Program-made: the position numbers and the translations under genes | Virus record (IMG/VR): IMGVR_UViG_3300042402_002564 | Location: 62,001 to 126,000 of that record | DNA length: 64,000 nt | Strand: one strand, 5' to 3' | Shown here: in pieces, positions 8,324-20,571 of the stretch | How the letters are laid out: each line of letters opens with the position of its first letter | Numbering within the stretch: the stretch's first letter is position 1 | The notes under the pieces: model-generated | The model's input: the letters and a program-made list of their open reading frames with translations, nothing else | What the model was told of the DNA's origin: nothing | Databases searched by the model: none

Positions 8324-11300
8324 ATGGGTCTCAGTCGCTTAGATAATTTCTTAAAGAATAGTAGAGGTGATATTATATATGTTGATCCCTCAAGTATAGA
8401 TTCAACTGACAGTATTGAGAATCAAGGTAATTCTCTAGTCAGACCCTTTAAAACTATTCAAAGAGCTTTAATAGAAGCAGCAAGATTTTCATATCAAAGA
8501 GGTTTAGATAATGACCGATTTGGTAGAACAACAATTATTGTATATCCAGGTGAGCATTTAATCGATAATAGACCTGGATGGATACCAATTCATGACAATC
8601 CAGTAGCTGGAAATAATTGGTTAACCAGAGGTGGTGCAGTATCTAATGAATTTCCAGAGTTTAACTTAAATTCCAACTTTGATATTAATAATGATACTAA
8701 TGATCTTTATAAAATGAATAGTGTATTCGGGGGTATTATTATTCCTCGTGGTACATCTATTGTTGGTATGGATCTTAGGAAAACTAAAATTAGGGCTAAA
8801 TTTATCCCTAATCCAGAAGATGATACTATTGATAGAACATCAATCTTTAGAGTAACTGGTTCTTGTTATTTTTATCAGTTTACGTTTTTTGACGCAGACC
8901 CAAATAGTGTAGTATTTAAAGATTATGGTCCTACAAAGTTCGTTCCAAATTTTTCACACCATAAACTAACTTGTTTTGAATATGCTGATGGTGTAAATCC
9001 TGTTATTTTCGATGACCAATATATTACATATAAGACTACAAAAACCGATCTAGATTTATATTATGATAAAATCGCACTTGCATATGGTTCATCTAGTGGA
9101 AGATTAATATCTCCAGATTTTCCAACTGATGGTGTAGATGTACAAACAAAAATTGATGAATATAGAATTGTTGGTTCAAAAGGTCAAAATGTTGGTATCA
9201 CCAGCATTAAGGCGGGTGATGGTGTAGTATCTTCGACTACAATCACCGTTGATATTGAAGAACCAATTGGTGGACTAGATGTAGATACTCCAATTAGAAT
9301 CGAAGGTGTACCTACTGCTGGTTATAATGGACAATATGTTGTAAGCACATCTGAAAGTCCTACTCGAATTACCTATAAAACTTCTTCTTCTCCAGCAAAT
9401 CCGCTTCCTACTATTGTAAGTGGAACACCTACATTAAACATTGTAGTTGATACTGTAACATCAGCTTCTCCATATATCTTTAACTGTTCTCTTAGATCAG
9501 TATTTGGTATGTGTGGTCTTCACGCTGATGGTAGTAAAGCCGATGGATTTAAATCCATGGTTGTTGCCCAGTTTACTGGTATCGGTCTACAAAAAGACGA
9601 TAATGCATTCTTAAAATATAATACTACCTCTGGTGTATATGAAGACAAAACTGCAGTATCGAATATTCACACAAATTCTTCTGCGGTATATAAACCAGAA
9701 TACGAAAACTTCCACATTAAAGCATCGAATGATGCATTCTTACAGTTAGTTTCTGTATTTGCTATTGGTTATGCAAATCACTTCTTAGCGGAAAGTGGTG
9801 GTGACCATTCTATTACAAACTCTAACTCAAACTTTGGTGCAAAATCTCTTGTTGCTAGAGGATTTAAAAAAGAAGCGTTCTCAAGAGATGACACTGGATT
9901 TATAACTCATATTATTCCACCACAAGAAATTCAAAGTGAAGATATTAATGTTGAGTATACTTCTATTGACGTAGAAACAACTGTAGGTATTGGAAGTACC
10001 ACAAGATTATATCTTTATAATGAAACTGATTTAGATAATCCACCACTATCAGTTGTTGATGGATACAGAATTGGTTCTAAAATAAATGATGAATTAAAGG
10101 TTCTTCTTAACATTAACGGGCAATCTACTACAAAAACATCTAAAATTATAATGCCAAATACCCAGTCAACTGGGATTTATGAAAGTTCTTCTTATAAAGA
10201 AGCTGTTGTTGGTAGAACAAATATTGGTATTAATAGTATTTCTTCTAATACTTTTACTTTAACTGCACCTCACCAATTCATACAAGGCGAATCTTTAAGA
10301 GTTTTTAGTAGTGATGGTGAACTTCCTGATGGATTAAATCATAATCAGGTTTATTATGCAATTACTGCTGGAATTAATTCTGACCAAATTAAACTTTCCC
10401 AAACATTTAACGATACAATTACTGAAGATGCAGTAACTGTTAACAACAAAGGTGGCATTTTAACAATTGAAAGTAGAGTATCGGATAAAAAGTCTGGTGA
10501 TATTGGGCATCCAATTCAGTTTGATAGTAATATTGGTCAATGGTATCTTACTGTTAGTGGAATATCTAGTTACAATCAAATATACTCTAGTGTTGTTGGT
10601 CTTGGAACTACTACTCTTGGAAGAACAACACCAAGAACATTTATCACTAGAAAGTCTGATACCAGATCATTAATTGATAAAATCTATAAAGTTCGTTATG
10701 TAATTCCAAAAGATTCTGCAGTTATTGCACGACCACCTAGAGATGGATTCGTAATTCAAGAATCTAATACTACTATTGGTGCTACTCAAGAAGAAATTGG
10801 CAAGTACAATAGTGTTGATGCTGTAATTTTAAATAATTCTTCTGAATTAAGAAATTACAGATTTATATCTAATGCAGTTTGGGATTCTGTTGGTATTGCT
10901 ACTCTTACAACTGAAGTTCCACACGAATTATCTGTAGGTTCATTAATTCAAATTAATAACATTAAGTCTGGATTTAACACTACAGGTGTTGGTAATAGTG
11001 GTTTTAATGGTGAATACTTTGTAACTTCAAAACTTTCGAGAAGAGAATTTACAATTGGATTAACTACAAATCCAGGACTATTCCAAAGTGACACCTCTAT
11101 TAGAGACGTAGAGTTACCATATTATAAGAGAGTTAGATTTAATAATACTTTTGTAGTATATAAGTCCGAAGAAATTCAGCAATATGTTCCAAATACAAAA
11201 GATGGTGTTTATCATTTAACTATTATTGATTCTTCAAATTCCCCATCTGTTGAACCATTTACTCAACTAAGATTCTCTCAACCAGTAAAAAATCTTTATC

Positions 11301-14161
11301 CACAACTAGATAGAGATAATATTACTTCTGACCCAGATCCAACAGTATCTTTTGCATTACCTTCTCCATTAGGATTAGTCGAAGTTAATAATCCAGAGAA
11401 TTCTGTTACTAGAGAAAGTATTGTAAAGAGCATTAATGATTTTGCTGTAGGATTTGGATTGACTGATATCCAATCTGCTACTGGATTTGCACATACATTA
11501 TATACTAGAATTGACCATGGATTAAACAGAATTACTAGAGTTGGTATAGTAAGTGCTGGTGAAAATTATGGTTCTGGTTCTGGTTCTATTGAAACTCTTT
11601 ATAATGCTAGGTTAGTAGGATTTGCTGGTTCAACAACTGGCAACTATGCAACTGCAAATATTAAAGTTGATGCTTTAGGTAGAATAACTGATGTTAGAAT
11701 TGTTGATGGTGGTTCTGCGTATGGAATTGGTAATACCCTTTCCGTGGTTGGTGTTGGTACAACATTAGGACATATTGTTGGTGTAGTATCTGTAACCCAA
11801 ATTAATAATGATATTGGTAATGTAATTTCTATAAGTGGACTATATGATAAAGTATTTGATACTTACAATAATCTTTATAGAATTACTGGAATTAACGTAG
11901 GGCAAACAAATCAAATTCAAGTTACTTCTTCTTCTGAAGTAGTTGCCCAATATCCATTTACTGGTTCTACTGCAATTGCTGGTGTTAATACTAATGGATT
12001 AAGTAAAATTAATGCAACTTTTTTAAATACTGTCGAGTCTTATGTAACTGGCAATTCTCTTGGAATCACTTCATTTACTTATAACAACTCTACTGGAATT
12101 GCTAGTGTAACAACATTACAATCTCATGGATTTGTAAATGGTACAAAGTTTAAAATTGGTGGATTTAATCAAAGTCTTTATAATGGTGATTTTATTACCA
12201 CAAAAATTGTTGGATTAAATGATTTTGAATTTAATATTGGTATAGGTACAACTTCTCCAGTATCTTCTGGAATAGCATACATTTATATTCCAGGATTTGC
12301 CGCACAAGGTGGATTATTGGCTGCGGATAATGAAGCAAATTCCAGTAGACTTGTTGCACAATATGCGGGTATTACAACTACTTTGGATGTTGCTTTAGTA
12401 GATCCAACAATCAATACATTGACAGTTACAAATGCATTAAACCGCAATTGGCAAGCTGGGGATTATATTATTGTAAACAAAGAAATAATGCGTATTAGTG
12501 AAACTGTCGTAATTGACACTGCAATAGATGTATTCCGTGGATTGTTTGGAACTTCAAAACAAGTACATCCTGCTGGATCTGTTGTTAGAAGAGTAAGATT
12601 TAAACCAATTGAATTTAGAAGAAACTCTATTCTACGTGCTTCTGGTCATACTTTTGAATATCTGGGTTATGGTCCAGGTAACTACTCTACAGCACTTCCA
12701 GAAAGACAAGATAGACAATTTATTGATGTTGAAAGAGTCTTATCACAGTCTGTAAGTGATGATGGTGGAACTCCAATTTATAATGGATTGGACGATAATG
12801 GTAATACATATACAGTTAATAAACTAACAAATGCTTCTACTGGTCAAGATTTATTAACTAAAGCACCAATCCCAACTGTCAGGGGTGAAGATATTACATC
12901 GAATACACAAGCAGTTGGATTTGATGTAGATTCCACTGATGATTTAACAGTTGCTAGAGGTTTAAAGGTTGAGGGTGGTTCTGAGTCTACTATTATTTCT
13001 GAATTTAACGGTCCCGTAATCTTTACCGAAAAAATAACATCGACTTCTGAAGATGGTATTTTGGCATCATCGTTATTCCTTCAAGGAGAATCGACAACTT
13101 CTAGAAAATATACCGTAGGAATTGCTACTCCACTATTATCTGGTAATGCTGGAGATATTGTTTATAAAGCAGATCCTAATGGCGGTGTTGCTGTTGGATG
13201 GGTTTATACTTTAGAGAATTCCTGGCAAGAATTTGGTCCTATTAAATCTGTAGGAACTGAAAGATATTGTGGTATCTTTAGTGGTGCATTTGTTGGTGAT
13301 GGTTCTGGTCTTGATAATGTATCTGATGTTTGGGTGTTCGATGGTATTGGTATCTCTACCACAAGAGCTGTTGGTATGGGAACAACTACATCTGTTCCAA
13401 GCGTTGCACTATATGTTGGTGGTAATGCAATTTTTGCTGGTGTTACAACAATTAGAACAAATCAGCTAACATTTGATGTTCCAAATGGATTCCTCGTTAA
13501 TACAGGTATAACAACCTTTAATCAGCAAGTTAATGTTAATACATTAAGAGCGATTGGTATTTCTACATTCCAAAATGACGTTATTATTACAACAAATCCA
13601 GCAACAACTGGAGATACTGCAGGTAACTTCTTAAGATTTGTTCAATCTGATACCGCAATTACTTCTGCTTATCAATATGGGGGAATTAATTGGGAGGGTA
13701 ATGATATTGGTAATACTGGAGTAAGAGGATACATTAGGGGTGTTGCCGAAGGTAGTACAGGACAGTTTGCTATTACATTTGGAACCCAACAGTCTGGTCC
13801 TTCCGCACCAATTGAACAATTAAGAATTGCTTCTGATGGTAATATTACTGCTAGTGGAGAAATTACTGCACTATCTGATGAAAGATATAAGACAAATGTG
13901 AAGAATATTGATGACCCTCTCGCTAAAGTTTTACAACTTCGTGGTGTAGAATATGATAGAATCGATAAAGAACAACATACTATTGGACTTATTGCTCAAG
14001 AAGTAGAAAAAGTTCTTCCTGAATTGGTTCACGAAAATCATGAGGGAGTAAAATCAGTTGCATATCAAAACATGGTTGCACTTCTAATTGAGGCAATTAA
14101 AGAGCAACAAAAACAAATTAGTGATTTGAAAGAAGAGGTTGACAAATTGAAGAATGTTTAG
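8324..14161 (+). CDS. Large tail fibre/virion protein with C-terminal peptidase S74 intramolecular chaperone
   Basis: 1945 aa, rich in Gly/Thr/Ser. C-terminus SDERYKTNV...IGLIAQEVEKVLPELV...LLIEAIKEQ. AATAAATA late promoter upstream. Confidence 0.85.
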   Translation: MGLSRLDNFLKNSRGDIIYVDPSSIDSTDSIENQGNSLVRPFKTIQRALIEAARFSYQRGLDNDRFGRTTIIVYPGEHLIDNRPGWIPIHDNPVAGNNWLTRGGAVSNEFPEFNLNSNFDINNDTNDLYKMNSVFGGIIIPRGTSIVGMDLRKTKIRAKFIPNPEDDTIDRTSIFRVTGSCYFYQFTFFDADPNSVVFKDYGPTKFVPNFSHHKLTCFEYADGVNPVIFDDQYITYKTTKTDLDLYYDKIALAYGSSSGRLISPDFPTDGVDVQTKIDEYRIVGSKGQNVGITSIKAGDGVVSSTTITVDIEEPIGGLDVDTPIRIEGVPTAGYNGQYVVSTSESPTRITYKTSSSPANPLPTIVSGTPTLNIVVDTVTSASPYIFNCSLRSVFGMCGLHADGSKADGFKSMVVAQFTGIGLQKDDNAFLKYNTTSGVYEDKTAVSNIHTNSSAVYKPEYENFHIKASNDAFLQLVSVFAIGYANHFLAESGGDHSITNSNSNFGAKSLVARGFKKEAFSRDDTGFITHIIPPQEIQSEDINVEYTSIDVETTVGIGSTTRLYLYNETDLDNPPLSVVDGYRIGSKINDELKVLLNINGQSTTKTSKIIMPNTQSTGIYESSSYKEAVVGRTNIGINSISSNTFTLTAPHQFIQGESLRVFSSDGELPDGLNHNQVYYAITAGINSDQIKLSQTFNDTITEDAVTVNNKGGILTIESRVSDKKSGDIGHPIQFDSNIGQWYLTVSGISSYNQIYSSVVGLGTTTLGRTTPRTFITRKSDTRSLIDKIYKVRYVIPKDSAVIARPPRDGFVIQESNTTIGATQEEIGKYNSVDAVILNNSSELRNYRFISNAVWDSVGIATLTTEVPHELSVGSLIQINNIKSGFNTTGVGNSGFNGEYFVTSKLSRREFTIGLTTNPGLFQSDTSIRDVELPYYKRVRFNNTFVVYKSEEIQQYVPNTKDGVYHLTIIDSSNSPSVEPFTQLRFSQPVKNLYPQLDRDNITSDPDPTVSFALPSPLGLVEVNNPENSVTRESIVKSINDFAVGFGLTDIQSATGFAHTLYTRIDHGLNRITRVGIVSAGENYGSGSGSIETLYNARLVGFAGSTTGNYATANIKVDALGRITDVRIVDGGSAYGIGNTLSVVGVGTTLGHIVGVVSVTQINNDIGNVISISGLYDKVFDTYNNLYRITGINVGQTNQIQVTSSSEVVAQYPFTGSTAIAGVNTNGLSKINATFLNTVESYVTGNSLGITSFTYNNSTGIASVTTLQSHGFVNGTKFKIGGFNQSLYNGDFITTKIVGLNDFEFNIGIGTTSPVSSGIAYIYIPGFAAQGGLLAADNEANSSRLVAQYAGITTTLDVALVDPTINTLTVTNALNRNWQAGDYIIVNKEIMRISETVVIDTAIDVFRGLFGTSKQVHPAGSVVRRVRFKPIEFRRNSILRASGHTFEYLGYGPGNYSTALPERQDRQFIDVERVLSQSVSDDGGTPIYNGLDDNGNTYTVNKLTNASTGQDLLTKAPIPTVRGEDITSNTQAVGFDVDSTDDLTVARGLKVEGGSESTIISEFNGPVIFTEKITSTSEDGILASSLFLQGESTTSRKYTVGIATPLLSGNAGDIVYKADPNGGVAVGWVYTLENSWQEFGPIKSVGTERYCGIFSGAFVGDGSGLDNVSDVWVFDGIGISTTRAVGMGTTTSVPSVALYVGGNAIFAGVTTIRTNQLTFDVPNGFLVNTGITTFNQQVNVNTLRAIGISTFQNDVIITTNPATTGDTAGNFLRFVQSDTAITSAYQYGGINWEGNDIGNTGVRGYIRGVAEGSTGQFAITFGTQQSGPSAPIEQLRIASDGNITASGEITALSDERYKTNVKNIDDPLAKVLQLRGVEYDRIDKEQHTIGLIAQEVEKVLPELVHENHEGVKSVAYQNMVALLIEAIKEQQKQISDLKEEVDKLKNV

Positions 14162-14189
14162 TAAGATTTGACCATAACTATATGGTATT

Positions 14190-15029
14190 ATGAATTTTAC
14201 TATATTATCAAATCCTCCATATCAAGACAATAATAAAGCAAAAAATAATAAACTTTGGTATAAATTTATTGAGTTAGATATTAATCTTCTTCAGACTGGC
14301 GGAACTATGGCAAAAGTTACGCCAGCATCTTTCATTGGAACAACGGGATTCGGTAAAAAGTTTTTTCAAAAATGTCAAACAATTTATAATTTGATTCAGA
14401 TTGACTATACTTCTGATAAGTATTTCACTGAAGGAGTATCAATTTGCTCTTGGATTTTAAAAAAAGAACCATATAAAGGAACTACAAAAGTCATACATGA
14501 GACTGGAATTTATTATTTGGATTTGAGGGATGGTCTTCCTTTATTTGGTGAAGAAAAAATATTGCATTCTATTTTTAACAAAATAGCAAACTCAAATCAT
14601 CCAAGAATACCTCTTAAGATTGGTCAGGATATTCCAAATGATGAATATTGTGATGATGGAAAATATGAGGTTTATGCCTCTGGTAAAAATATTAAAAGAA
14701 CTAATGTTGTTCCAACAACTGGAGATTTATTGAAGTTTGTAGTTCCATACTCGTGCTCATATTCTGGTAGATTTATCACAAATGGATATGTTGGTATGTT
14801 AAACTCGTGGTGCCATATTAAAAATGAAGAGGAGGGAGACCTGCTATCAAAAATTTTTGATGTTCCTCTAATACAATTGTTTGTTGAAAATTATAAAACT
14901 ACTGCTGGATTTGCTGCAGCAGTTAAAAATGCAGAAGTTCCTCTTTTAAAGAATTTTGAAAATGTGCATGAACAATTTGATTTTACACCTGAAGAACTTG
15001 AGTATTTAAAAGATAAAAATGTCATCTAA
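14190..15029 (+). CDS. N6-adenine/N4-cytosine DNA methyltransferase, catalytic (NPPY) plus TRD half, Eco57I-like
   Basis: Begins at motif IV (ILSNPPYQ), then LW..F and VTPASF. No SAM-binding motif I is present. Confidence 0.75.
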   Translation: MNFTILSNPPYQDNNKAKNNKLWYKFIELDINLLQTGGTMAKVTPASFIGTTGFGKKFFQKCQTIYNLIQIDYTSDKYFTEGVSICSWILKKEPYKGTTKVIHETGIYYLDLRDGLPLFGEEKILHSIFNKIANSNHPRIPLKIGQDIPNDEYCDDGKYEVYASGKNIKRTNVVPTTGDLLKFVVPYSCSYSGRFITNGYVGMLNSWCHIKNEEEGDLLSKIFDVPLIQLFVENYKTTAGFAAAVKNAEVPLLKNFENVHEQFDFTPEELEYLKDKNVI

Positions 15030-15438
15030 TAAAAATAAGCATAATGAGTCTTTGGGGTCTAAAGTTGAAAGATCCGACCAAAGAATTTCAGAGACTGGTG
15101 AAGTTTTTACTCCACCAGATTTAGTTAATGAGTTGATTGAGTGTATCGATGAAGATTTATTTAAAAATCCCAATTCAAAATTTCTTGATAACTCTGCTGG
15201 AAATGGAAATTTTATATTTGAATTAAAAACCAAATTATGTAAATATCATGATGAAGATTATGTGTTAAACAATATGCTATATGCTGTTGAATTGATGGAA
15301 GATAATCATAAAGAATTGTGTAAACGATTGGGGGTTCCTACAACACATCCACATTATGTTTGTGCGGATGCCCTTGAATATCACTATCGATTTGATGGTA
15401 CAATAGGTCATCCTACCTTAGACCAATTTTTTAACTGA
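15019..15438 (+). CDS. DNA methyltransferase SAM-binding half
   Basis: GEVFTP (motif X), FLDNSAGNGNF (motif I), LYAVEL (II), CADAL (III). No NPPY. Confidence 0.75.
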   Translation: MSSNKNKHNESLGSKVERSDQRISETGEVFTPPDLVNELIECIDEDLFKNPNSKFLDNSAGNGNFIFELKTKLCKYHDEDYVLNNMLYAVELMEDNHKELCKRLGVPTTHPHYVCADALEYHYRFDGTIGHPTLDQFFN

Positions 15439-15490
15439 CCACCTGCACCACCCGTGCGGGTAAATTTTGCTGTATAATAATTTTATTGAC

Positions 15491-16729
15491 ATGACACCCA
15501 TGAAACTCCGAACTCATCAGTCCGAAGCACTCTCCATCATGAGCAATACCCCCAAAGGTACTATTGTGGTTCCTACTGGCGGTGGCAAGTCCCTGATTGC
15601 CATTATGGATGCTGTGCGTCAGTTTGAGCAAGGAAACAAAACCATTGTGGTGGTTGCTCCTCGTCTCATGCTTGCACGTCAGTTGTCTGCTGAGTTTACA
15701 GAGCACATTACCAATGCTTCTGTGATGCATGTTCACTCTGGTAATGATCTTCCTTATTTTACTACTACAAAACCCAAAGAGATCTTCTCTTGGTGCTATC
15801 GCACTAATGGTAATAAGTTGATTTTTACTACTTATCAATCTTTGTATCGTATTGAGCAGGCAGATATTGTAGTTGATACAATCTATTATGATGAAGCACA
15901 CAACTCGGTCAAAAAGAGTTTTTACCCTACCGTCAAGCATTTCTCTTCTAATGCTAACCGCAGTTATTTCTTCACTGCTACTCCTAAGTATTCTGCTACT
16001 GCTTCCAAACCTGGAATGAACGATGTGGAAGTTTATGGTGGAATCATTTACAATGTTGCTGCTACACGCCTCGTCAACAACGGTTCTATTCTTCCCCCTA
16101 AGATTAACGCAATTAATATCGGTGGTATCCGTCTGAAGGGCGAGGAGGCAGCAGAGAGGGACTGTATGACCCTTCTGGATACCCTGTACAATGAAGAGCA
16201 CATGGAGAAGGTTTTGATTGCTGCTCCTAACACTAAAGTGATGATCCGTATGCTTGCAGAGACTGATTTCTTGAAAGAAGTTCAGTCTATGGGTTATGAC
16301 CTTCTTTGGATTACCAGCAAGCATGGTTCGTTCCTTAACGACAAAAAGATTTCCCGTGAGGAATTCTTTAATCTTGTTCGTGAGTTTGGTGCAGACCCTG
16401 ACAAAAAGTTCATTGTTCTTCACTATTCCATTCTCAGCGAAGGAATCTCTGTTCCTGGTCTGACTTCTTTGATTCTCATGCGTCAGATGAATGTGATTGA
16501 AATGTGTCAGTCTGTTGGTCGCGTCATTCGTCTTCATCTTGATGATGTGAAGCGTATTCAAGAAGGAACTCTTGTTCCTGGTAAACTTCAGGATTACACT
16601 AAATCTTTTGGTTTAGTTCATGTTCCTGTCTACAACAATGTTGGAATTGCTACTGTGAAGCGTCTCCAAAGTATTGTTGATACTGTATTTGTTCAAGGTC
16701 AACCTGCAATCTCTACTATTAAACGATGA
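15491..16729 (+). CDS. Superfamily 2 (DEAH) helicase, ResIII-like
   Basis: PTGGGKS, YYDEAH, FTATP, LSEGISVP and QSVGRVIR. Confidence 0.9.
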   Translation: MTPMKLRTHQSEALSIMSNTPKGTIVVPTGGGKSLIAIMDAVRQFEQGNKTIVVVAPRLMLARQLSAEFTEHITNASVMHVHSGNDLPYFTTTKPKEIFSWCYRTNGNKLIFTTYQSLYRIEQADIVVDTIYYDEAHNSVKKSFYPTVKHFSSNANRSYFFTATPKYSATASKPGMNDVEVYGGIIYNVAATRLVNNGSILPPKINAINIGGIRLKGEEAAERDCMTLLDTLYNEEHMEKVLIAAPNTKVMIRMLAETDFLKEVQSMGYDLLWITSKHGSFLNDKKISREEFFNLVREFGADPDKKFIVLHYSILSEGISVPGLTSLILMRQMNVIEMCQSVGRVIRLHLDDVKRIQEGTLVPGKLQDYTKSFGLVHVPVYNNVGIATVKRLQSIVDTVFVQGQPAISTIKR

Positions 16730-16902: not shown

Positions 16903-17097
16903 ATGAAATCTAAATTTATTTGCGTCTCTCCCATCACAGATAAGGCAAAAGAAAACTTTTCAACTATAATGAATTCTTTTCATTCTTGTCGAGTAAAACA
17001 AGAAAAAAAAGACATGATTTATCTTGAGTCTCTCAATAAAATGTATTATTTTTGGGTAAATAAAAGTAAAGACCCTAACTGGAAAATTGAAAAATAA
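16903..17097 (+). CDS. Hypothetical protein, paralog of 63718..63906
   Basis: Both share V-x-P...KAK..F...C.V...FWVN..KDP.W. Confidence 0.6.
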   Translation: MKSKFICVSPITDKAKENFSTIMNSFHSCRVKQEKKDMIYLESLNKMYYFWVNKSKDPNWKIEK

Positions 17098-17584
17098 TAT
17101 GTGGAAGATAAAATATCTTGAACATGGTTATGCAGATTATTTTGACAAATGGTTACCATTTTTTAAATATAAATCTGATTTAGTTCAAGATAATACGAAC
17201 AATTGTTTATCTAAAAATTGCTTTGCAACAAAAAATCTGTTAAAATTTGTGGGCGATAATGAATTTTTAGATATTATTGAAGAGTTAAAGTCTATTTGTG
17301 AGAAATGTGTAAATAAAGAACTAGAATACTTTTATTTGCATATGATTGATTATGAAAATGGAGGTGAAATGTCATCCCACAAACATGATCATAATGAAGA
17401 CTATAGTTTTATTCTTTATCTTAATTCTTGTGAAGATGGGGATACCCTTCTTCATCTTGATCCTGAAATAAAAATAAAACCAGTTAAAGATAAAATGGTG
17501 TTATTTTCTTCAGATATTGTTCATTCTGCTATTTTTTCTAATAAAAAAAGAATTCTTGTTGGAGGATTAAAACTATGTCTTTAA
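17087..17584 (+). CDS. 2OG-Fe(II) oxygenase-like protein
   Basis: HKHDH, SFILYLN, LFSSDIVH and KRILVG. Confidence 0.65.
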   Translation: MKNNMWKIKYLEHGYADYFDKWLPFFKYKSDLVQDNTNNCLSKNCFATKNLLKFVGDNEFLDIIEELKSICEKCVNKELEYFYLHMIDYENGGEMSSHKHDHNEDYSFILYLNSCEDGDTLLHLDPEIKIKPVKDKMVLFSSDIVHSAIFSNKKRILVGGLKLCL

Positions 17585-19428: not shown

Positions 19429-20571
19429 ATGCACTACAAATTTCCAACAATTACAAATTTGGATCAGGTTAAAACTGCCATTGAAGGTTATGATGAATTT
19501 CGCGTAACTAACAAAGGATTTTATACCGTAGTGAATTATGCTGTAGCATTCGATAATACTTTTGATATTGTCGATGAGAATGATGTTAATGGAATGATAC
19601 GTAGAGAATGTAGGGGATTAATTTTTGATGTTGATGGTAATTTAATCTCTCGTCCTTATCATAAATTTTTTAATTTGAATGAAAGGAAAGAAACCCATAT
19701 CGACACAGTTGGATTTGACCTCCACACTGTTCTTGAAAAGATGGATGGATCTATGATTAGACCAATTCCTTCTGAATATGGATTTAGACTCGCCACTAAA
19801 GCTGGGATTACTGATGTTGCAATAAATGCTGAAATTTTTATTTCAGATAAACCAGAGTATGCAAATTTTATTAATCATTGTATTTCTAGAAATCTAACCC
19901 CAATTTTTGAATGGTGCTCTCGTAAAAACAGAATCGTAGTTGATTATCCAGAAGATAAATTAGTTCTTACTGCTTTGAGAAGTATTAAAAATGGTTCTTA
20001 TTGTTCGTATAATAACCTTCGTCTTTTATCTGAACATTATGATATTCCTCTGGTTAAAAAATGGCCAGATAATATGGACATACAACAATTAGTTGAATAT
20101 GTCCGTAATCTTGAAGATGAGGAAGGTATTGTTCTTCGTTTTGATAATGGACATATGTTAAAAATCAAAGCAGAAGAATATGTTCTTCGTCATAAATCTA
20201 AAGAACAAATCAGTCAAGAAAAAAATGTCTTGGAAGTAATCATTGAAGATAAAGTTGATGATGTAATACCATTATTGAGTGATTCTGATGCCAACAGATT
20301 AAAATACTTCCAAAAGGCATTTTGGATTAATGTTGACGAGGTTGCTTTTAATTTAGCAGAAGTTTATCAAAAAGGAAAAAACTATAAAGATAAGAAATCT
20401 TTTGCTGTGGAGTTTGTTCAAAAACTTAGTCCTCACTTGCAACCATTCATGTATGCAATGAATTCTGGAAAAGGTTCTAAGAGTCTTTTGATAGAATCTA
20501 TTAAAAAGTCTACTACTTCACAAACTAAGATTGATCAATCACGTTGGATGTGGGGAAACCTAGTTTGGTAA
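19429..20571 (+). CDS. rnlA: T4 Rnl1-like RNA ligase
   Basis: RECRGLIF, RPYHKFFNLNE, EKMDGS (motif I), FEW, EGIVL and KIKAEEY. Confidence 0.92.
   Translation: MHYKFPTITNLDQVKTAIEGYDEFRVTNKGFYTVVNYAVAFDNTFDIVDENDVNGMIRRECRGLIFDVDGNLISRPYHKFFNLNERKETHIDTVGFDLHTVLEKMDGSMIRPIPSEYGFRLATKAGITDVAINAEIFISDKPEYANFINHCISRNLTPIFEWCSRKNRIVVDYPEDKLVLTALRSIKNGSYCSYNNLRLLSEHYDIPLVKKWPDNMDIQQLVEYVRNLEDEEGIVLRFDNGHMLKIKAEEYVLRHKSKEQISQEKNVLEVIIEDKVDDVIPLLSDSDANRLKYFQKAFWINVDEVAFNLAEVYQKGKNYKDKKSFAVEFVQKLSPHLQPFMYAMNSGKGSKSLLIESIKKSTTSQTKIDQSRWMWGNLVW

What the first reader, a model, noticed from the sequence alone, without database searches (positions are those of the whole stretch)
14190..15438. DNA methyltransferase split into two genes in swapped order
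Seen: the first ORF starts at catalytic motif IV (NPPY) and carries a TRD-like region. The overlapping second ORF holds motifs X, I, II and III (GEVFTP, DNSAGNGNF) and stops before NPPY. The halves are complementary, and the C-terminal half comes first, so a frameshift or sequencing error cannot explain it. Inference: a heterodimeric amino-methyltransferase, or an intermediate of circular permutation with an exchangeable specificity subunit. It is followed by a ResIII-like helicase, although that gene has its own promoter.
Basis: partly seen in the sequence, partly recalled or inferred. Interest (0 to 1): 0.65.

Follow-up and report, generated by a model that had tools for sequence, protein, structure and literature searches.

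The report
Split, order-swapped phage adenine methyltransferase
A freshwater T4-like cyanophage encodes a DNA adenine methyltransferase as two overlapping genes, catalytic half first and cofactor-binding half second; the arrangement is conserved in many related phages and looks like a natural intermediate in the circular permutation of these enzymes.

Summary
ORF1 (14190-15029, 279 aa) starts at motif IV (NPPY, residues 8-11), and its frame closes four codons upstream. ORF2 (15019-15438, 139 aa) carries motifs X, I, II and III and overlaps ORF1 by 11 nt. It is not an error. Contigs from independent lake metagenomes match exactly. In 71 related viral contigs an NPPY-bearing gene lies just upstream of the ORF2 homologue, and in 40 of them it starts at NPPY. 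Both genes are under strong purifying selection (dN/dS 0.06-0.07). A complex model pairs ORF1's strand beta-4 with ORF2's strand beta-1 (ipSAE 0.83, best control 0.26). The most likely reading is a two-subunit, TaqI/CamA-like N6-adenine DNA methyltransferase. One thing is unexplained: ORF2 is also kept beside relatives whose catalytic gene has its own compact, selected cofactor-binding half, so ORF2 is probably more than a spare half. I rate it a new variant of a known kind, of moderate interest. No methylation or binding has been measured.

The parts
14139..14167 (+). sigma-70-like promoter match (TTGACA-17-TAAGAT) 22 nt upstream of ORF1
   Evidence: The number of such matches in the region is no higher than in shuffles (13 found against 12.3 expected), so this is weak evidence.
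14190..15029 (+). ORF1, 279 aa: the catalytic half of a gamma-type N6-adenine methyltransferase (motif IV NPPY at nt 14211-14222, then the strands after beta-4) plus a C-terminal region of about 170 aa that is a TRD by position
   Evidence: open frame of 283 codons only. One search found relatives of 47-90% identity. One search gave dN/dS 0.064. One search gave a weak profile hit to HsdM residues 255-336. The TRD assignment rests on position only.
15019..15029 (+). 11-nt overlap of the ORF1 stop with the ORF2 start (ATGTCATCTAA), a layout typical of translational coupling
   Evidence: Overlaps in relatives are 4, 11, 14, 17, 20 or 32 nt with no shared slippery site.
15019..15438 (+). ORF2, 139 aa: the AdoMet-binding half. 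It holds motif X GEVFTP (nt 15097-15114), motif I DNSAGNGNF (nt 15187-15213), motif II YAVELMED and motif III YVCADAL
   Evidence: One search showed the motif residues invariant in 40 sequences. One search gave dN/dS 0.071. One search gave a profile hit to CamA residues 30-83 (E 8e-4). One search matched the C-terminus of the fused Aeh1p090 (98% probability).
15441..15461 (+). terminator-like hairpin with a T-rich tail, directly after the ORF2 stop
   Evidence: one found against 1.4 expected in shuffles, so only suggestive. An RNA-library contig at 15348-15492 runs across it.
15467..16729 (+). SF2 helicase (ResIII/DEAD plus Helicase_C), 420 aa, a conserved downstream neighbour of the pair. Its GC content is 0.40-0.44 against about 0.30 in the flanks
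   Evidence: distant hits to UvsW and XPB. Its link to the methyltransferase rests on gene neighbourhood only.

Best explanation
ORF1 and ORF2 are the two subunits of one N6-adenine DNA methyltransferase of the gamma (M.TaqI / CamA / Eco57I-like) type, split between motifs III and IV. The catalytic half plus target-recognition region is encoded first. The AdoMet-binding half (motifs X, I, II, III) is encoded second and is probably translationally coupled to it through the 11-nt overlap. ORF2's strand beta-1 pairs with ORF1's strand beta-4 and restores the 3-2-1-4-5-7-6 Rossmann-like sheet. ORF2 then binds AdoMet, ORF1's NPPY loop takes the flipped adenine, and ORF1's C-terminal region reads the DNA sequence. 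The likely role is methylation of phage DNA to protect it from host restriction. Shown here: the motifs, the closed frame, conserved synteny, purifying selection, and the existence of canonical-order and fused permuted relatives. Inferred only: the heterodimer, AdoMet binding, adenine-N6 chemistry, DNA as the substrate, and the biological role. In evolutionary terms, this is the two-gene stage between the canonical order and the fused permuted order seen in Aeromonas phages. The direction of that change is not resolved.
For: Contigs of three independent lake metagenomes bridge the ORF1 start and the ORF1/ORF2 junction with no differences and no indels, and at least 18 runs hold the stretch. 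Of 80 viral loci with an ORF2 homologue, 71 have an NPPY-bearing ORF ending at or overlapping its start. In 40 of those the ORF begins at NPPY (residues 8-17). NPPY-first forms occur in both partner families, so they arose more than once. Against the 90%-identical lineage L011, dN/dS is 0.064 for ORF1 and 0.071 for ORF2 at dS of about 0.74. The genome holds exactly one copy of each gene. The complex model scored ipSAE 0.83 (runs 0.85, 0.81, 0.83) against a best control of 0.26. That mark was reached by 58 of 80 solved complexes and 2 of 110 mismatched pairs. The runs share at least 81% of contacts and the partner's pLDDT is at least 75. The tightest contacts are ORF1 residues 3-7 with ORF2 residues 53-58, that is beta-4 against beta-1. 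The fused relative Aeh1p090 has NPPY at residue 9, FFTP at 295 and EPSCGDGNI at 322, and it is one ORF in four Aeromonas phage records. The canonical-order relative is the NatCom_35866 methyltransferase, with VFTP at 26 and NPPY at 190. A model of a 56%-identical relative hits CamA, M.TaqI, M.BseCI and HsdM in Foldseek (E 1e-11 to 1e-9).
Against: No binding or methylation has been measured. The complex score may only reflect the program rebuilding a familiar single-chain fold from two pieces, and my own alignments were used, so the calibration counts hold only roughly. ORF2 is kept just as faithfully next to partners that have their own compact beta1-beta3 half. That half folds confidently in the model and is under purifying selection (omega 0.09-0.20). 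MA01 and Bellamy have only such a partner plus one ORF2. So supplying the missing half cannot be ORF2's only role in the family. On their own, ORF1 and ORF2 score just below the Pfam cut-offs. The TRD is assigned by position only.
Confidence: 0.7

Rival explanations
1. ORF2 is a dedicated accessory or regulatory AdoMet-binding subunit of a phage helicase-linked methyltransferase module, not simply the missing half. ORF1 in this phage would then be a 5'-truncated derivative of the roughly 1050-aa helicase-methyltransferase fusion of relatives, and it works, if at all, only because ORF2 happens to fit the vacant site.
For: ORF1's nearest relatives outside its own lineage are the C-terminal 281-283 aa of proteins of 1043-1101 aa. 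These carry an N-terminal ResIII-like region and their own mini N-half. ORF2 follows them with the same 11-nt overlap. The mini N-half is under selection and folds as beta1-alpha-beta2-alpha-beta3. The number of ORF2 copies equals the number of Eco57I-like modules in P-SSM2, S-CAM7, MA01 and Bellamy. Other cyanophages shuffle a cassette of nuclease-like protein, methyltransferase, helicase and ORF2.
Against: In the window genome the large N-terminal region and the nuclease-like protein are absent, yet ORF1 and ORF2 remain under strong purifying selection. The fused Aeh1p090 has no other beta1-beta3 than the ORF2-like part. ORF2 keeps every AdoMet-binding motif invariant.
Confidence: 0.2
2. The two ORFs are joined during translation by a programmed +1 frameshift in the 11-nt overlap, giving a single-chain permuted enzyme like Aeh1p090.
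For: A fused homologue with exactly this order exists. ORF2 lies in the +1 frame and overlaps the end of ORF1.
Against: The overlaps differ among relatives (ATGA in S-CAM7; 11, 14, 17, 20 or 32 nt elsewhere) and share no slippery motif. ORF2 has its own ATG, and its sequence is conserved from the first residues onward. In ACG-2014f, Bellamy, MA01, L024 and L027 the ORF2 homologue is separated from the methyltransferase gene by a gap or by other genes.
Confidence: 0.04
3. The pair is a decaying remnant or an assembly or sequencing artefact of one gene and has no function.
For: ORF1 lacks any AdoMet-binding half and looks like the tail of a larger gene of relatives. Both ORFs fall just below Pfam cut-offs.
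Against: Identical sequence turns up in independent metagenomes without indels. dN/dS is 0.06-0.07. The same architecture is seen in 40 contigs and in two partner families.
Confidence: 0.03
4. The enzyme methylates something other than DNA adenine, for example RNA or protein glutamine (HemK-type NPPY enzymes), or DNA cytosine-N4.
For: NPPY also occurs in HemK/PrmC-type and some RNA methyltransferases. ORF1 gives a weak hit to the MTS family. No product has been measured.
Against: The best sequence and fold neighbours are all DNA N6-adenine methyltransferases: Eco57I, N6_Mtase, CamA, M.TaqI, M.BseCI, HsdM and PglX. The neighbourhood holds helicases and, in relatives, nuclease-like genes.
Confidence: 0.03

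Closest known systems
Gamma-class N6-adenine DNA methyltransferases (M.TaqI, CamA, M.BseCI, Eco57I-like PF07669 / N6_Mtase PF02384)
   Same: The motif set is the same: X (xxFxTP), I (DxxxGxGxF), II, III and IV (NPPY). The fold neighbours are the same, and a target-recognition region follows the catalytic half.
   Different: Those enzymes are single chains in the order X-I-II-III-IV...TRD. Here the chain is cut between motifs III and IV, and the second piece is encoded first.
Beta-class amino-methyltransferases (order IV-VIII, TRD, X, I-III; e.g. M.PvuII, M.RsrI, CcrM; class definitions from my own knowledge)
   Same: The order of motifs along the DNA is the same, and it is the same in the fused relative Aeh1p090.
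   Different: The sequence family is different: there is no PF01555 hit and the motifs are of the gamma/Eco57I type. The window's version is two polypeptides.
Aeromonas phage Aeh1 Aeh1p090 and phrog_11371 (annotated as hypothetical or 'similar to type III restriction endonuclease')
   Same: It starts at MxFDxxIxNPPY and ends with an ORF2-like X-I-II-III region (hhalign probability 98%, E 5.5e-14, 33% identity).
   Different: It is one 415-aa chain. Its middle (TRD) region cannot be aligned with ORF1. It is untested experimentally, as far as the records show.
Naturally split C5-cytosine methyltransferases M.AquI and M.EcoHK31I, and engineered split or permuted M.HaeIII, M.SssI and M.MpeI (PMC5944983, PMC3404938)
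   Same: Two polypeptides assemble into one methyltransferase. Laboratory permutants of M.HaeIII that start between motifs III and IV are active (as summarised in PMC5944983), and that is the cut site seen here.
   Different: Those are C5-cytosine enzymes. [quoted passage not shown] Here it is an amino-methyltransferase cut at III|IV with the gene order swapped.
Type ISP / Type IIG helicase- or nuclease-methyltransferase fusions (LlaGI, MmeI-like) and BREX PglX
   Same: Relatives of ORF1 are fused to a ResIII-like N-terminal region (MA01, 1074 aa). An SF2 helicase is a conserved neighbour. ORF1 gives a weak hit to PglX, and the helicase gives marginal hits to LlaGI and Type IIG models.
   Different: The window genome has no fused translocase and no nuclease. 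No nuclease domain was found in the large relatives. A separate ORF2 subunit is not a feature of those systems.

Membership tests
Gamma-class N6-adenine DNA methyltransferase (Eco57I-like / M.TaqI-like) | Catalytic motif IV (N/D)PP(Y/F) after strand beta-4 | tested here: met
   NPPY is at ORF1 residues 8-11 and is invariant in 24 relatives.
Gamma-class N6-adenine DNA methyltransferase (Eco57I-like / M.TaqI-like) | AdoMet-binding motifs X, I, II and III | tested here: met
   ORF2 has GEVFTP, DNSAGNGNF, YAVELMED and YVCADAL. The key residues are invariant in 40 sequences, and the profile hits CamA residues 30-83.
Gamma-class N6-adenine DNA methyltransferase (Eco57I-like / M.TaqI-like) | All motifs in one chain in the order X-I-II-III-IV-...-TRD | tested here: not met
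   There are two ORFs, with the IV...TRD piece first. The ORF1 frame closes 4 codons upstream of its ATG.
Gamma-class N6-adenine DNA methyltransferase (Eco57I-like / M.TaqI-like) | Score above the curated Pfam cut-off | tested here: inconclusive
   ORF1 scores 23.6 bits against the Eco57I cut-off of 25.3. ORF2 scores 16.9 bits against the N6_Mtase cut-off of 20.4. Longer relatives score 29-60 bits. Each half covers only part of a profile.
Gamma-class N6-adenine DNA methyltransferase (Eco57I-like / M.TaqI-like) | Transfers methyl to the N6 of adenine in a specific DNA sequence | not testable with these tools
   This needs expression and methylome sequencing.
Beta-class (permuted) amino-methyltransferases | Motif order IV-VIII, TRD, X, I-III | tested here: met
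   The order along the DNA in the window matches, and so does the order within the single chain Aeh1p090.
Beta-class (permuted) amino-methyltransferases | Membership of the N6_N4_Mtase (PF01555) sequence family in a single polypeptide | tested here: not met
   There is no PF01555 hit at E up to 1, the best hits are Eco57I and N6_Mtase, and there are two polypeptides.
Naturally split (two-subunit) DNA methyltransferases | Two separately translated polypeptides, each lacking essential motifs | tested here: met
   ORF1 lacks motifs X and I-III, and ORF2 lacks IV-VIII and the TRD. The split is conserved in 40 NPPY-first loci.
Naturally split (two-subunit) DNA methyltransferases | The subunits bind each other and are active only together | tested here: inconclusive
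   The model supports binding (ipSAE 0.83 against a best control of 0.26; the mark was reached by 58 of 80 solved complexes and 2 of 110 mismatched pairs; contacts agree in at least 81%; partner pLDDT at least 75). No experiment has been done.
Type ISP / Type IIG restriction-modification fusion enzymes | Nuclease plus translocase or helicase plus methyltransferase plus TRD in one protein | tested here: not met
   ORF1 has no N-terminal extension. The large N-terminal region of relatives and the nuclease-like protein are absent from this genome.

The most novel reading that the evidence does not exclude
ORF2 is a universal, separately encoded AdoMet-binding subunit that this whole family of phage methyltransferases requires, including members that carry their own cofactor-binding half. 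That would imply a mode of assembly or regulation not described for DNA methyltransferases, such as a second AdoMet site or exchange of the cis half for the trans subunit. Taken together, the cyanophage and Aeromonas phage genes would preserve all three stages of circular permutation by fission and fusion: canonical order, split with swapped order, and fused permuted order.
Probability: 0.3. Interest if true: 0.7.

Novelty: new variant of a known kind. Interest (0 to 1): 0.55.

Why it matters
Circular permutation of DNA methyltransferases is a textbook case of change in protein topology. The natural intermediates known so far are C5-cytosine enzymes that keep the canonical gene order. This looks like an abundant, selected, natural two-gene stage of an adenine methyltransferase, cut at the site (III|IV) where laboratory permutants of M.HaeIII remain active. 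A canonical-order relative and a fused permuted relative are both available for comparison. It also gives a likely function to two widespread cyanophage gene families annotated as hypothetical (phrog_4376; T4-GC 33 and 34 of P-SSM2). It further suggests a conserved cofactor subunit combined with interchangeable catalytic and specificity subunits, which could be tested directly and might serve as a natural split-methyltransferase scaffold.

Tried and rejected
1. AlphaFold2 of the fused Aeromonas protein, using a 4-sequence alignment, gave mean pLDDT 45 and pTM 0.36. That is uninformative, so it was not used.
2. The six-frame Eco57I match in the own genome extends 129 nt upstream of ORF1 but crosses 5 stops and lies inside the tail-fibre gene. 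I treated it as noise, not as a decayed N-half.
3. I looked for extra NPPY-first genes sharing one ORF2. The weak Eco57I hits in P-SSM2 (PSSM2_187 and PSSM2_078) are complete small methyltransferases of other kinds. Only ACG-2014f has two modules for one ORF2.
4. The large N-terminal region of relatives and the 199-aa protein next to some relatives' methyltransferases are absent from this genome. I suspected that 199-aa protein to be a PD-(D/E)xK nuclease from its sequence alone. It gives no Pfam or PADLOC hit. The large N-terminal region gives no PDB sequence hit.
5. The terminator-like hairpin is a single match.
6. Literature searches found natural split C5 enzymes and engineered permutants, but no report of a natural split amino-methyltransferase or of these cyanophage genes. 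The library is incomplete, and Bujnicki 2002 was not held.
7. The genome-contig scan gave one hit, a 'Rhodobacteraceae' MAG contig with the same three genes, probably a mis-binned phage contig. The scan finds close relatives only.
8. The large representative protein search was not run, as the operators advised, because no claim here rests on an absence of relatives.

Full report
**What is there**

The window lies at 62001-126000 of a 246.5-kb viral record with terminal repeats, rated complete. Its relatives are T4-like cyanomyoviruses (Kyanoviridae). The sequence is held by at least 18 lake or freshwater metagenome runs.

ORF1 (14190-15029) encodes 279 aa beginning MNFTILSNPPYQ. Motif IV sits at residues 8-11. 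The open frame is only 283 codons long, and a 1945-aa tail-fibre gene with a Peptidase_S74 end stops at 14161. ORF1 therefore cannot carry an upstream cofactor-binding half.

ORF2 (15019-15438) encodes 139 aa with GEVFTP (motif X), DNSAGNGNF (motif I), YAVELMED (motif II) and YVCADAL (motif III), and it has no NPPY. The genes overlap by 11 nt, with ORF2 in the +1 frame.

Pfam and PHROG scans see the two halves of an Eco57I/N6_Mtase-type enzyme. Each scores just under the curated cut-off, because each covers only part of a profile. ORF2 matches phrog_4376 ('unknown function') end to end. The genome has one copy of each gene.

**Is it real?**

Contigs from three independent lake metagenomes bridge both the ORF1 start and the ORF1/ORF2 junction with no differences and no indels.

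A scan of IMG/VR found 293 relatives of ORF2, and I examined the best 80 loci.
- In 71 loci, an NPPY-bearing ORF ends at or overlaps the start of the ORF2 homologue.
- In 40 of those, that ORF begins at NPPY (residues 8-17).
- In the remaining 31, NPPY lies further in, at residue 70 or beyond; these forms carry N-terminal extensions, and in the sequences I inspected the extension includes a cofactor-binding half of their own.
- Of the other 9 loci, 7 are cut by the contig end. Two (L024, L027) have the methyltransferase two genes upstream.

The isolates P-SSM2 (genes 036/037) and S-CAM7 (gp076/077 and gp056/057) show the same order.

Against the lineage L011-L015, which has the same tail-fibre, ORF1, ORF2, helicase architecture, dN/dS is as follows at dS of about 0.74:

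| gene | dN/dS |
|---|---|
| ORF1 | 0.064 |
| ORF2 | 0.071 |
| helicase | 0.10 |
| tail-fibre C-terminal part | 0.35 |

The pair is therefore neither an artefact nor a decaying remnant.

The conclusion that this is not an error is right. The reason given is not. Aeromonas phage Aeh1 protein Aeh1p090 (415 aa) starts MHFDYMIANPPY and ends with FFTP...EPSCGDGNI...YACEYMLDN. It is a single chain in the same order, IV...TRD-X-I-II-III.

The ORF2 profile aligns to its residues 283-369 with 98% probability (E 5.5e-14). It is one intact ORF in four Aeromonas phage records of 69-100% identity. A frameshift in such a gene would mimic the window's picture.

A canonical-order relative also exists: the NatCom_35866 methyltransferase, with VFTP at residue 26 and MKFDVIIGNPPY ending at 193. 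All three topologies therefore occur among phage relatives: canonical, split and swapped, and fused permuted.

**Do the halves fit?**

I folded the pair using alignments of 24 ORF1-type and 40 ORF2-type sequences.
- The score was ipSAE 0.83 (runs 0.85, 0.81, 0.83) against a best control of 0.26.
- That mark was reached by 58 of 80 solved complexes and 2 of 110 mismatched pairs.
- The runs agree in at least 81% of contacts, and the partner's pLDDT is at least 75.
- The counts hold only roughly, because my own alignments were used.

The tightest contacts are ORF1 residues 3-7 against ORF2 residues 53-58. That is strand beta-4 beside strand beta-1, the junction a class-I methyltransferase sheet needs. 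The motif-X helix packs on ORF1's first helix.

This shows structural complementarity, not binding. The program may simply be rebuilding a known fold from two pieces.

Sequence profiles hit CamA (ORF2) and HsdM (ORF1). A model of a 56%-identical relative (pLDDT 74) matches CamA, M.TaqI, M.BseCI and HsdM by Foldseek. The enzyme type is therefore a gamma-class N6-adenine DNA methyltransferase.

**What does not fit the simple story**

ORF1's nearest relatives outside its own lineage are the last 281-283 residues of proteins of 1043-1101 aa. MA01's 1074-aa version has a ResIII-like N-terminal region. Shorter forms of 337-346 aa and 435-468 aa also exist.

All of these carry, just before NPPY, a compact beta1-alpha-beta2-alpha-beta3 unit (for example YMFGDPSGSH...ITVWES) that lacks motif X. 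That unit folds confidently in the model and is under purifying selection (omega 0.09-0.20). ORF2 still follows these genes with the same overlap.

| phage | Eco57I-like modules | ORF2 copies |
|---|---|---|
| MA01 | 1 (own N-half) | 1 |
| Bellamy | 1 (own N-half) | 1 |
| S-CAM7 | 2 | 2 |
| ACG-2014f | 2 | 1 |

From beta-4 onward, the partners fall into two unrelated families: 187-217 aa with 44 members, and 279-283 aa with 27 members. Each family contains both NPPY-first and N-extended forms. The cis half has therefore been lost or gained repeatedly, while ORF2 (60-69% identical throughout, motifs invariant) is always kept.

In the window phage ORF2 must supply the only cofactor-binding half. 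Why it persists beside complete domains is unexplained. This is the basis of the main rival reading, that ORF2 is an obligate extra subunit.

**Context**

The 420-aa SF2 helicase after ORF2 is a conserved neighbour. It directly follows the pair in every family-B locus where sequence is available, and lies one gene further in P-SSM2-type loci.

In other cyanophages a 199-aa protein (no family-scan match; possibly a nuclease), a methyltransferase, a helicase and ORF2 form a cassette whose gene order varies. The window genome lacks both that 199-aa protein and the large N-terminal region.

A terminator-like hairpin separates ORF2 from the helicase. The helicase gene is a GC-rich island. A wetland metatranscriptome holds two identical 151-nt contigs over the 3' part of ORF2 and the intergenic region. 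DNA carry-over cannot be excluded.

**Verdict**

The most likely reading (about 0.7) is a two-subunit, TaqI/CamA-like adenine methyltransferase with swapped gene order. It would be a natural two-gene stage of circular permutation. The closest known cases are the gamma-class enzymes (same motifs, one chain), the beta-class order (same order, different family) and the split C5 enzymes M.AquI and M.EcoHK31I (different chemistry, different cut site, canonical order; PMC5944983).

I found no report of a natural split amino-methyltransferase or of these genes, but the library is incomplete. I rate it a new variant of a known kind, with interest 0.55. Nothing here measures activity.

Noticed in passing
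window 8324-14161 (+): A 1945-aa tail-fibre-like protein with a C-terminal Peptidase_S74 intramolecular-chaperone domain (E 3.9e-16) lies directly upstream of ORF1. Its C-terminal 850 aa evolve much faster than the neighbours (dN/dS 0.35 against L011). P-SSM2-type loci also place a fibre-like gene before the methyltransferase pair.
   Followed up: partly
window 15400-16600: The helicase gene is a GC island (0.40-0.44) in a region of about 0.30 GC. It carries a 376-aa antisense ORF (15431-16561, minus strand), which is most likely a by-product of the composition. This may indicate a different origin from the ORF1-ORF2 pair.
   Followed up: no
L003 3482-4084, L005 3378-3941, L027 666-1265: A conserved protein of 187-200 aa sits next to ORF2 homologues and Eco57I-like methyltransferases in ACG-2014f, Bellamy and several contigs. 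It has a pattern like GxDGxG...Q(F/I)K(F/Y)K that suggests a PD-(D/E)xK nuclease. It gives no Pfam or PADLOC hit and is absent from the window genome.
   Followed up: partly
L004 119-3343 (MA01); L016 865-4008 and similar loci: Proteins of about 1050-1100 aa fuse a long N-terminal region (ResIII-like in MA01) to a complete mini methyltransferase domain and the ORF1-type TRD. GenBank annotates them as a 'type II R-M restriction subunit' or 'Eco57I'. No nuclease domain was detected, so their function in a lytic phage is unclear.
   Followed up: partly
L091 493-2426 (Klebsiella phage KpV477): A standalone ORF2-like protein of 153 aa (kpv477_028, annotated as DNA methyltransferase) follows a 381-aa ORF and a 110-aa ORF. 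The 381-aa ORF has a GIY-YIG-like N-terminus and NPPY at residue 239. The 110-aa ORF resembles the end of the Aeh1p090 middle region. This may be another split, or a gene interrupted by a homing endonuclease.
   Followed up: no
L099 (PAHT02000089.1, 'Rhodobacteraceae' MAG): The only hit among 185,579 species genomes is a 20-kb MAG contig with the same ORF1-type, ORF2 and helicase order. It is probably a cyanophage contig binned into a bacterial MAG.
   Followed up: partly
window 17087-17584, 19429-20571: Downstream genes include a 2OG-Fe(II) oxygenase (PF13640, E 5e-6) and a T4 Rnl1-type RNA ligase (E 3e-25).
   Followed up: no
window 15175-15492: Two 151-nt contigs of a wetland metatranscriptome run are identical or nearly identical to the 3' part of ORF2 and the ORF2-helicase spacer, and they run across the terminator-like hairpin. 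This hints at read-through transcription or DNA carry-over.
   Followed up: no
L007 2486-3391 (ACG-2014f gp191): An NPPY-first methyltransferase half of 301 aa lies about 100 kb from the genome's only ORF2 homologue. It overlaps the end of an 892-aa gene annotated as 'cytitidyltransferase'. This is a case where the two halves are not adjacent.
   Followed up: partly
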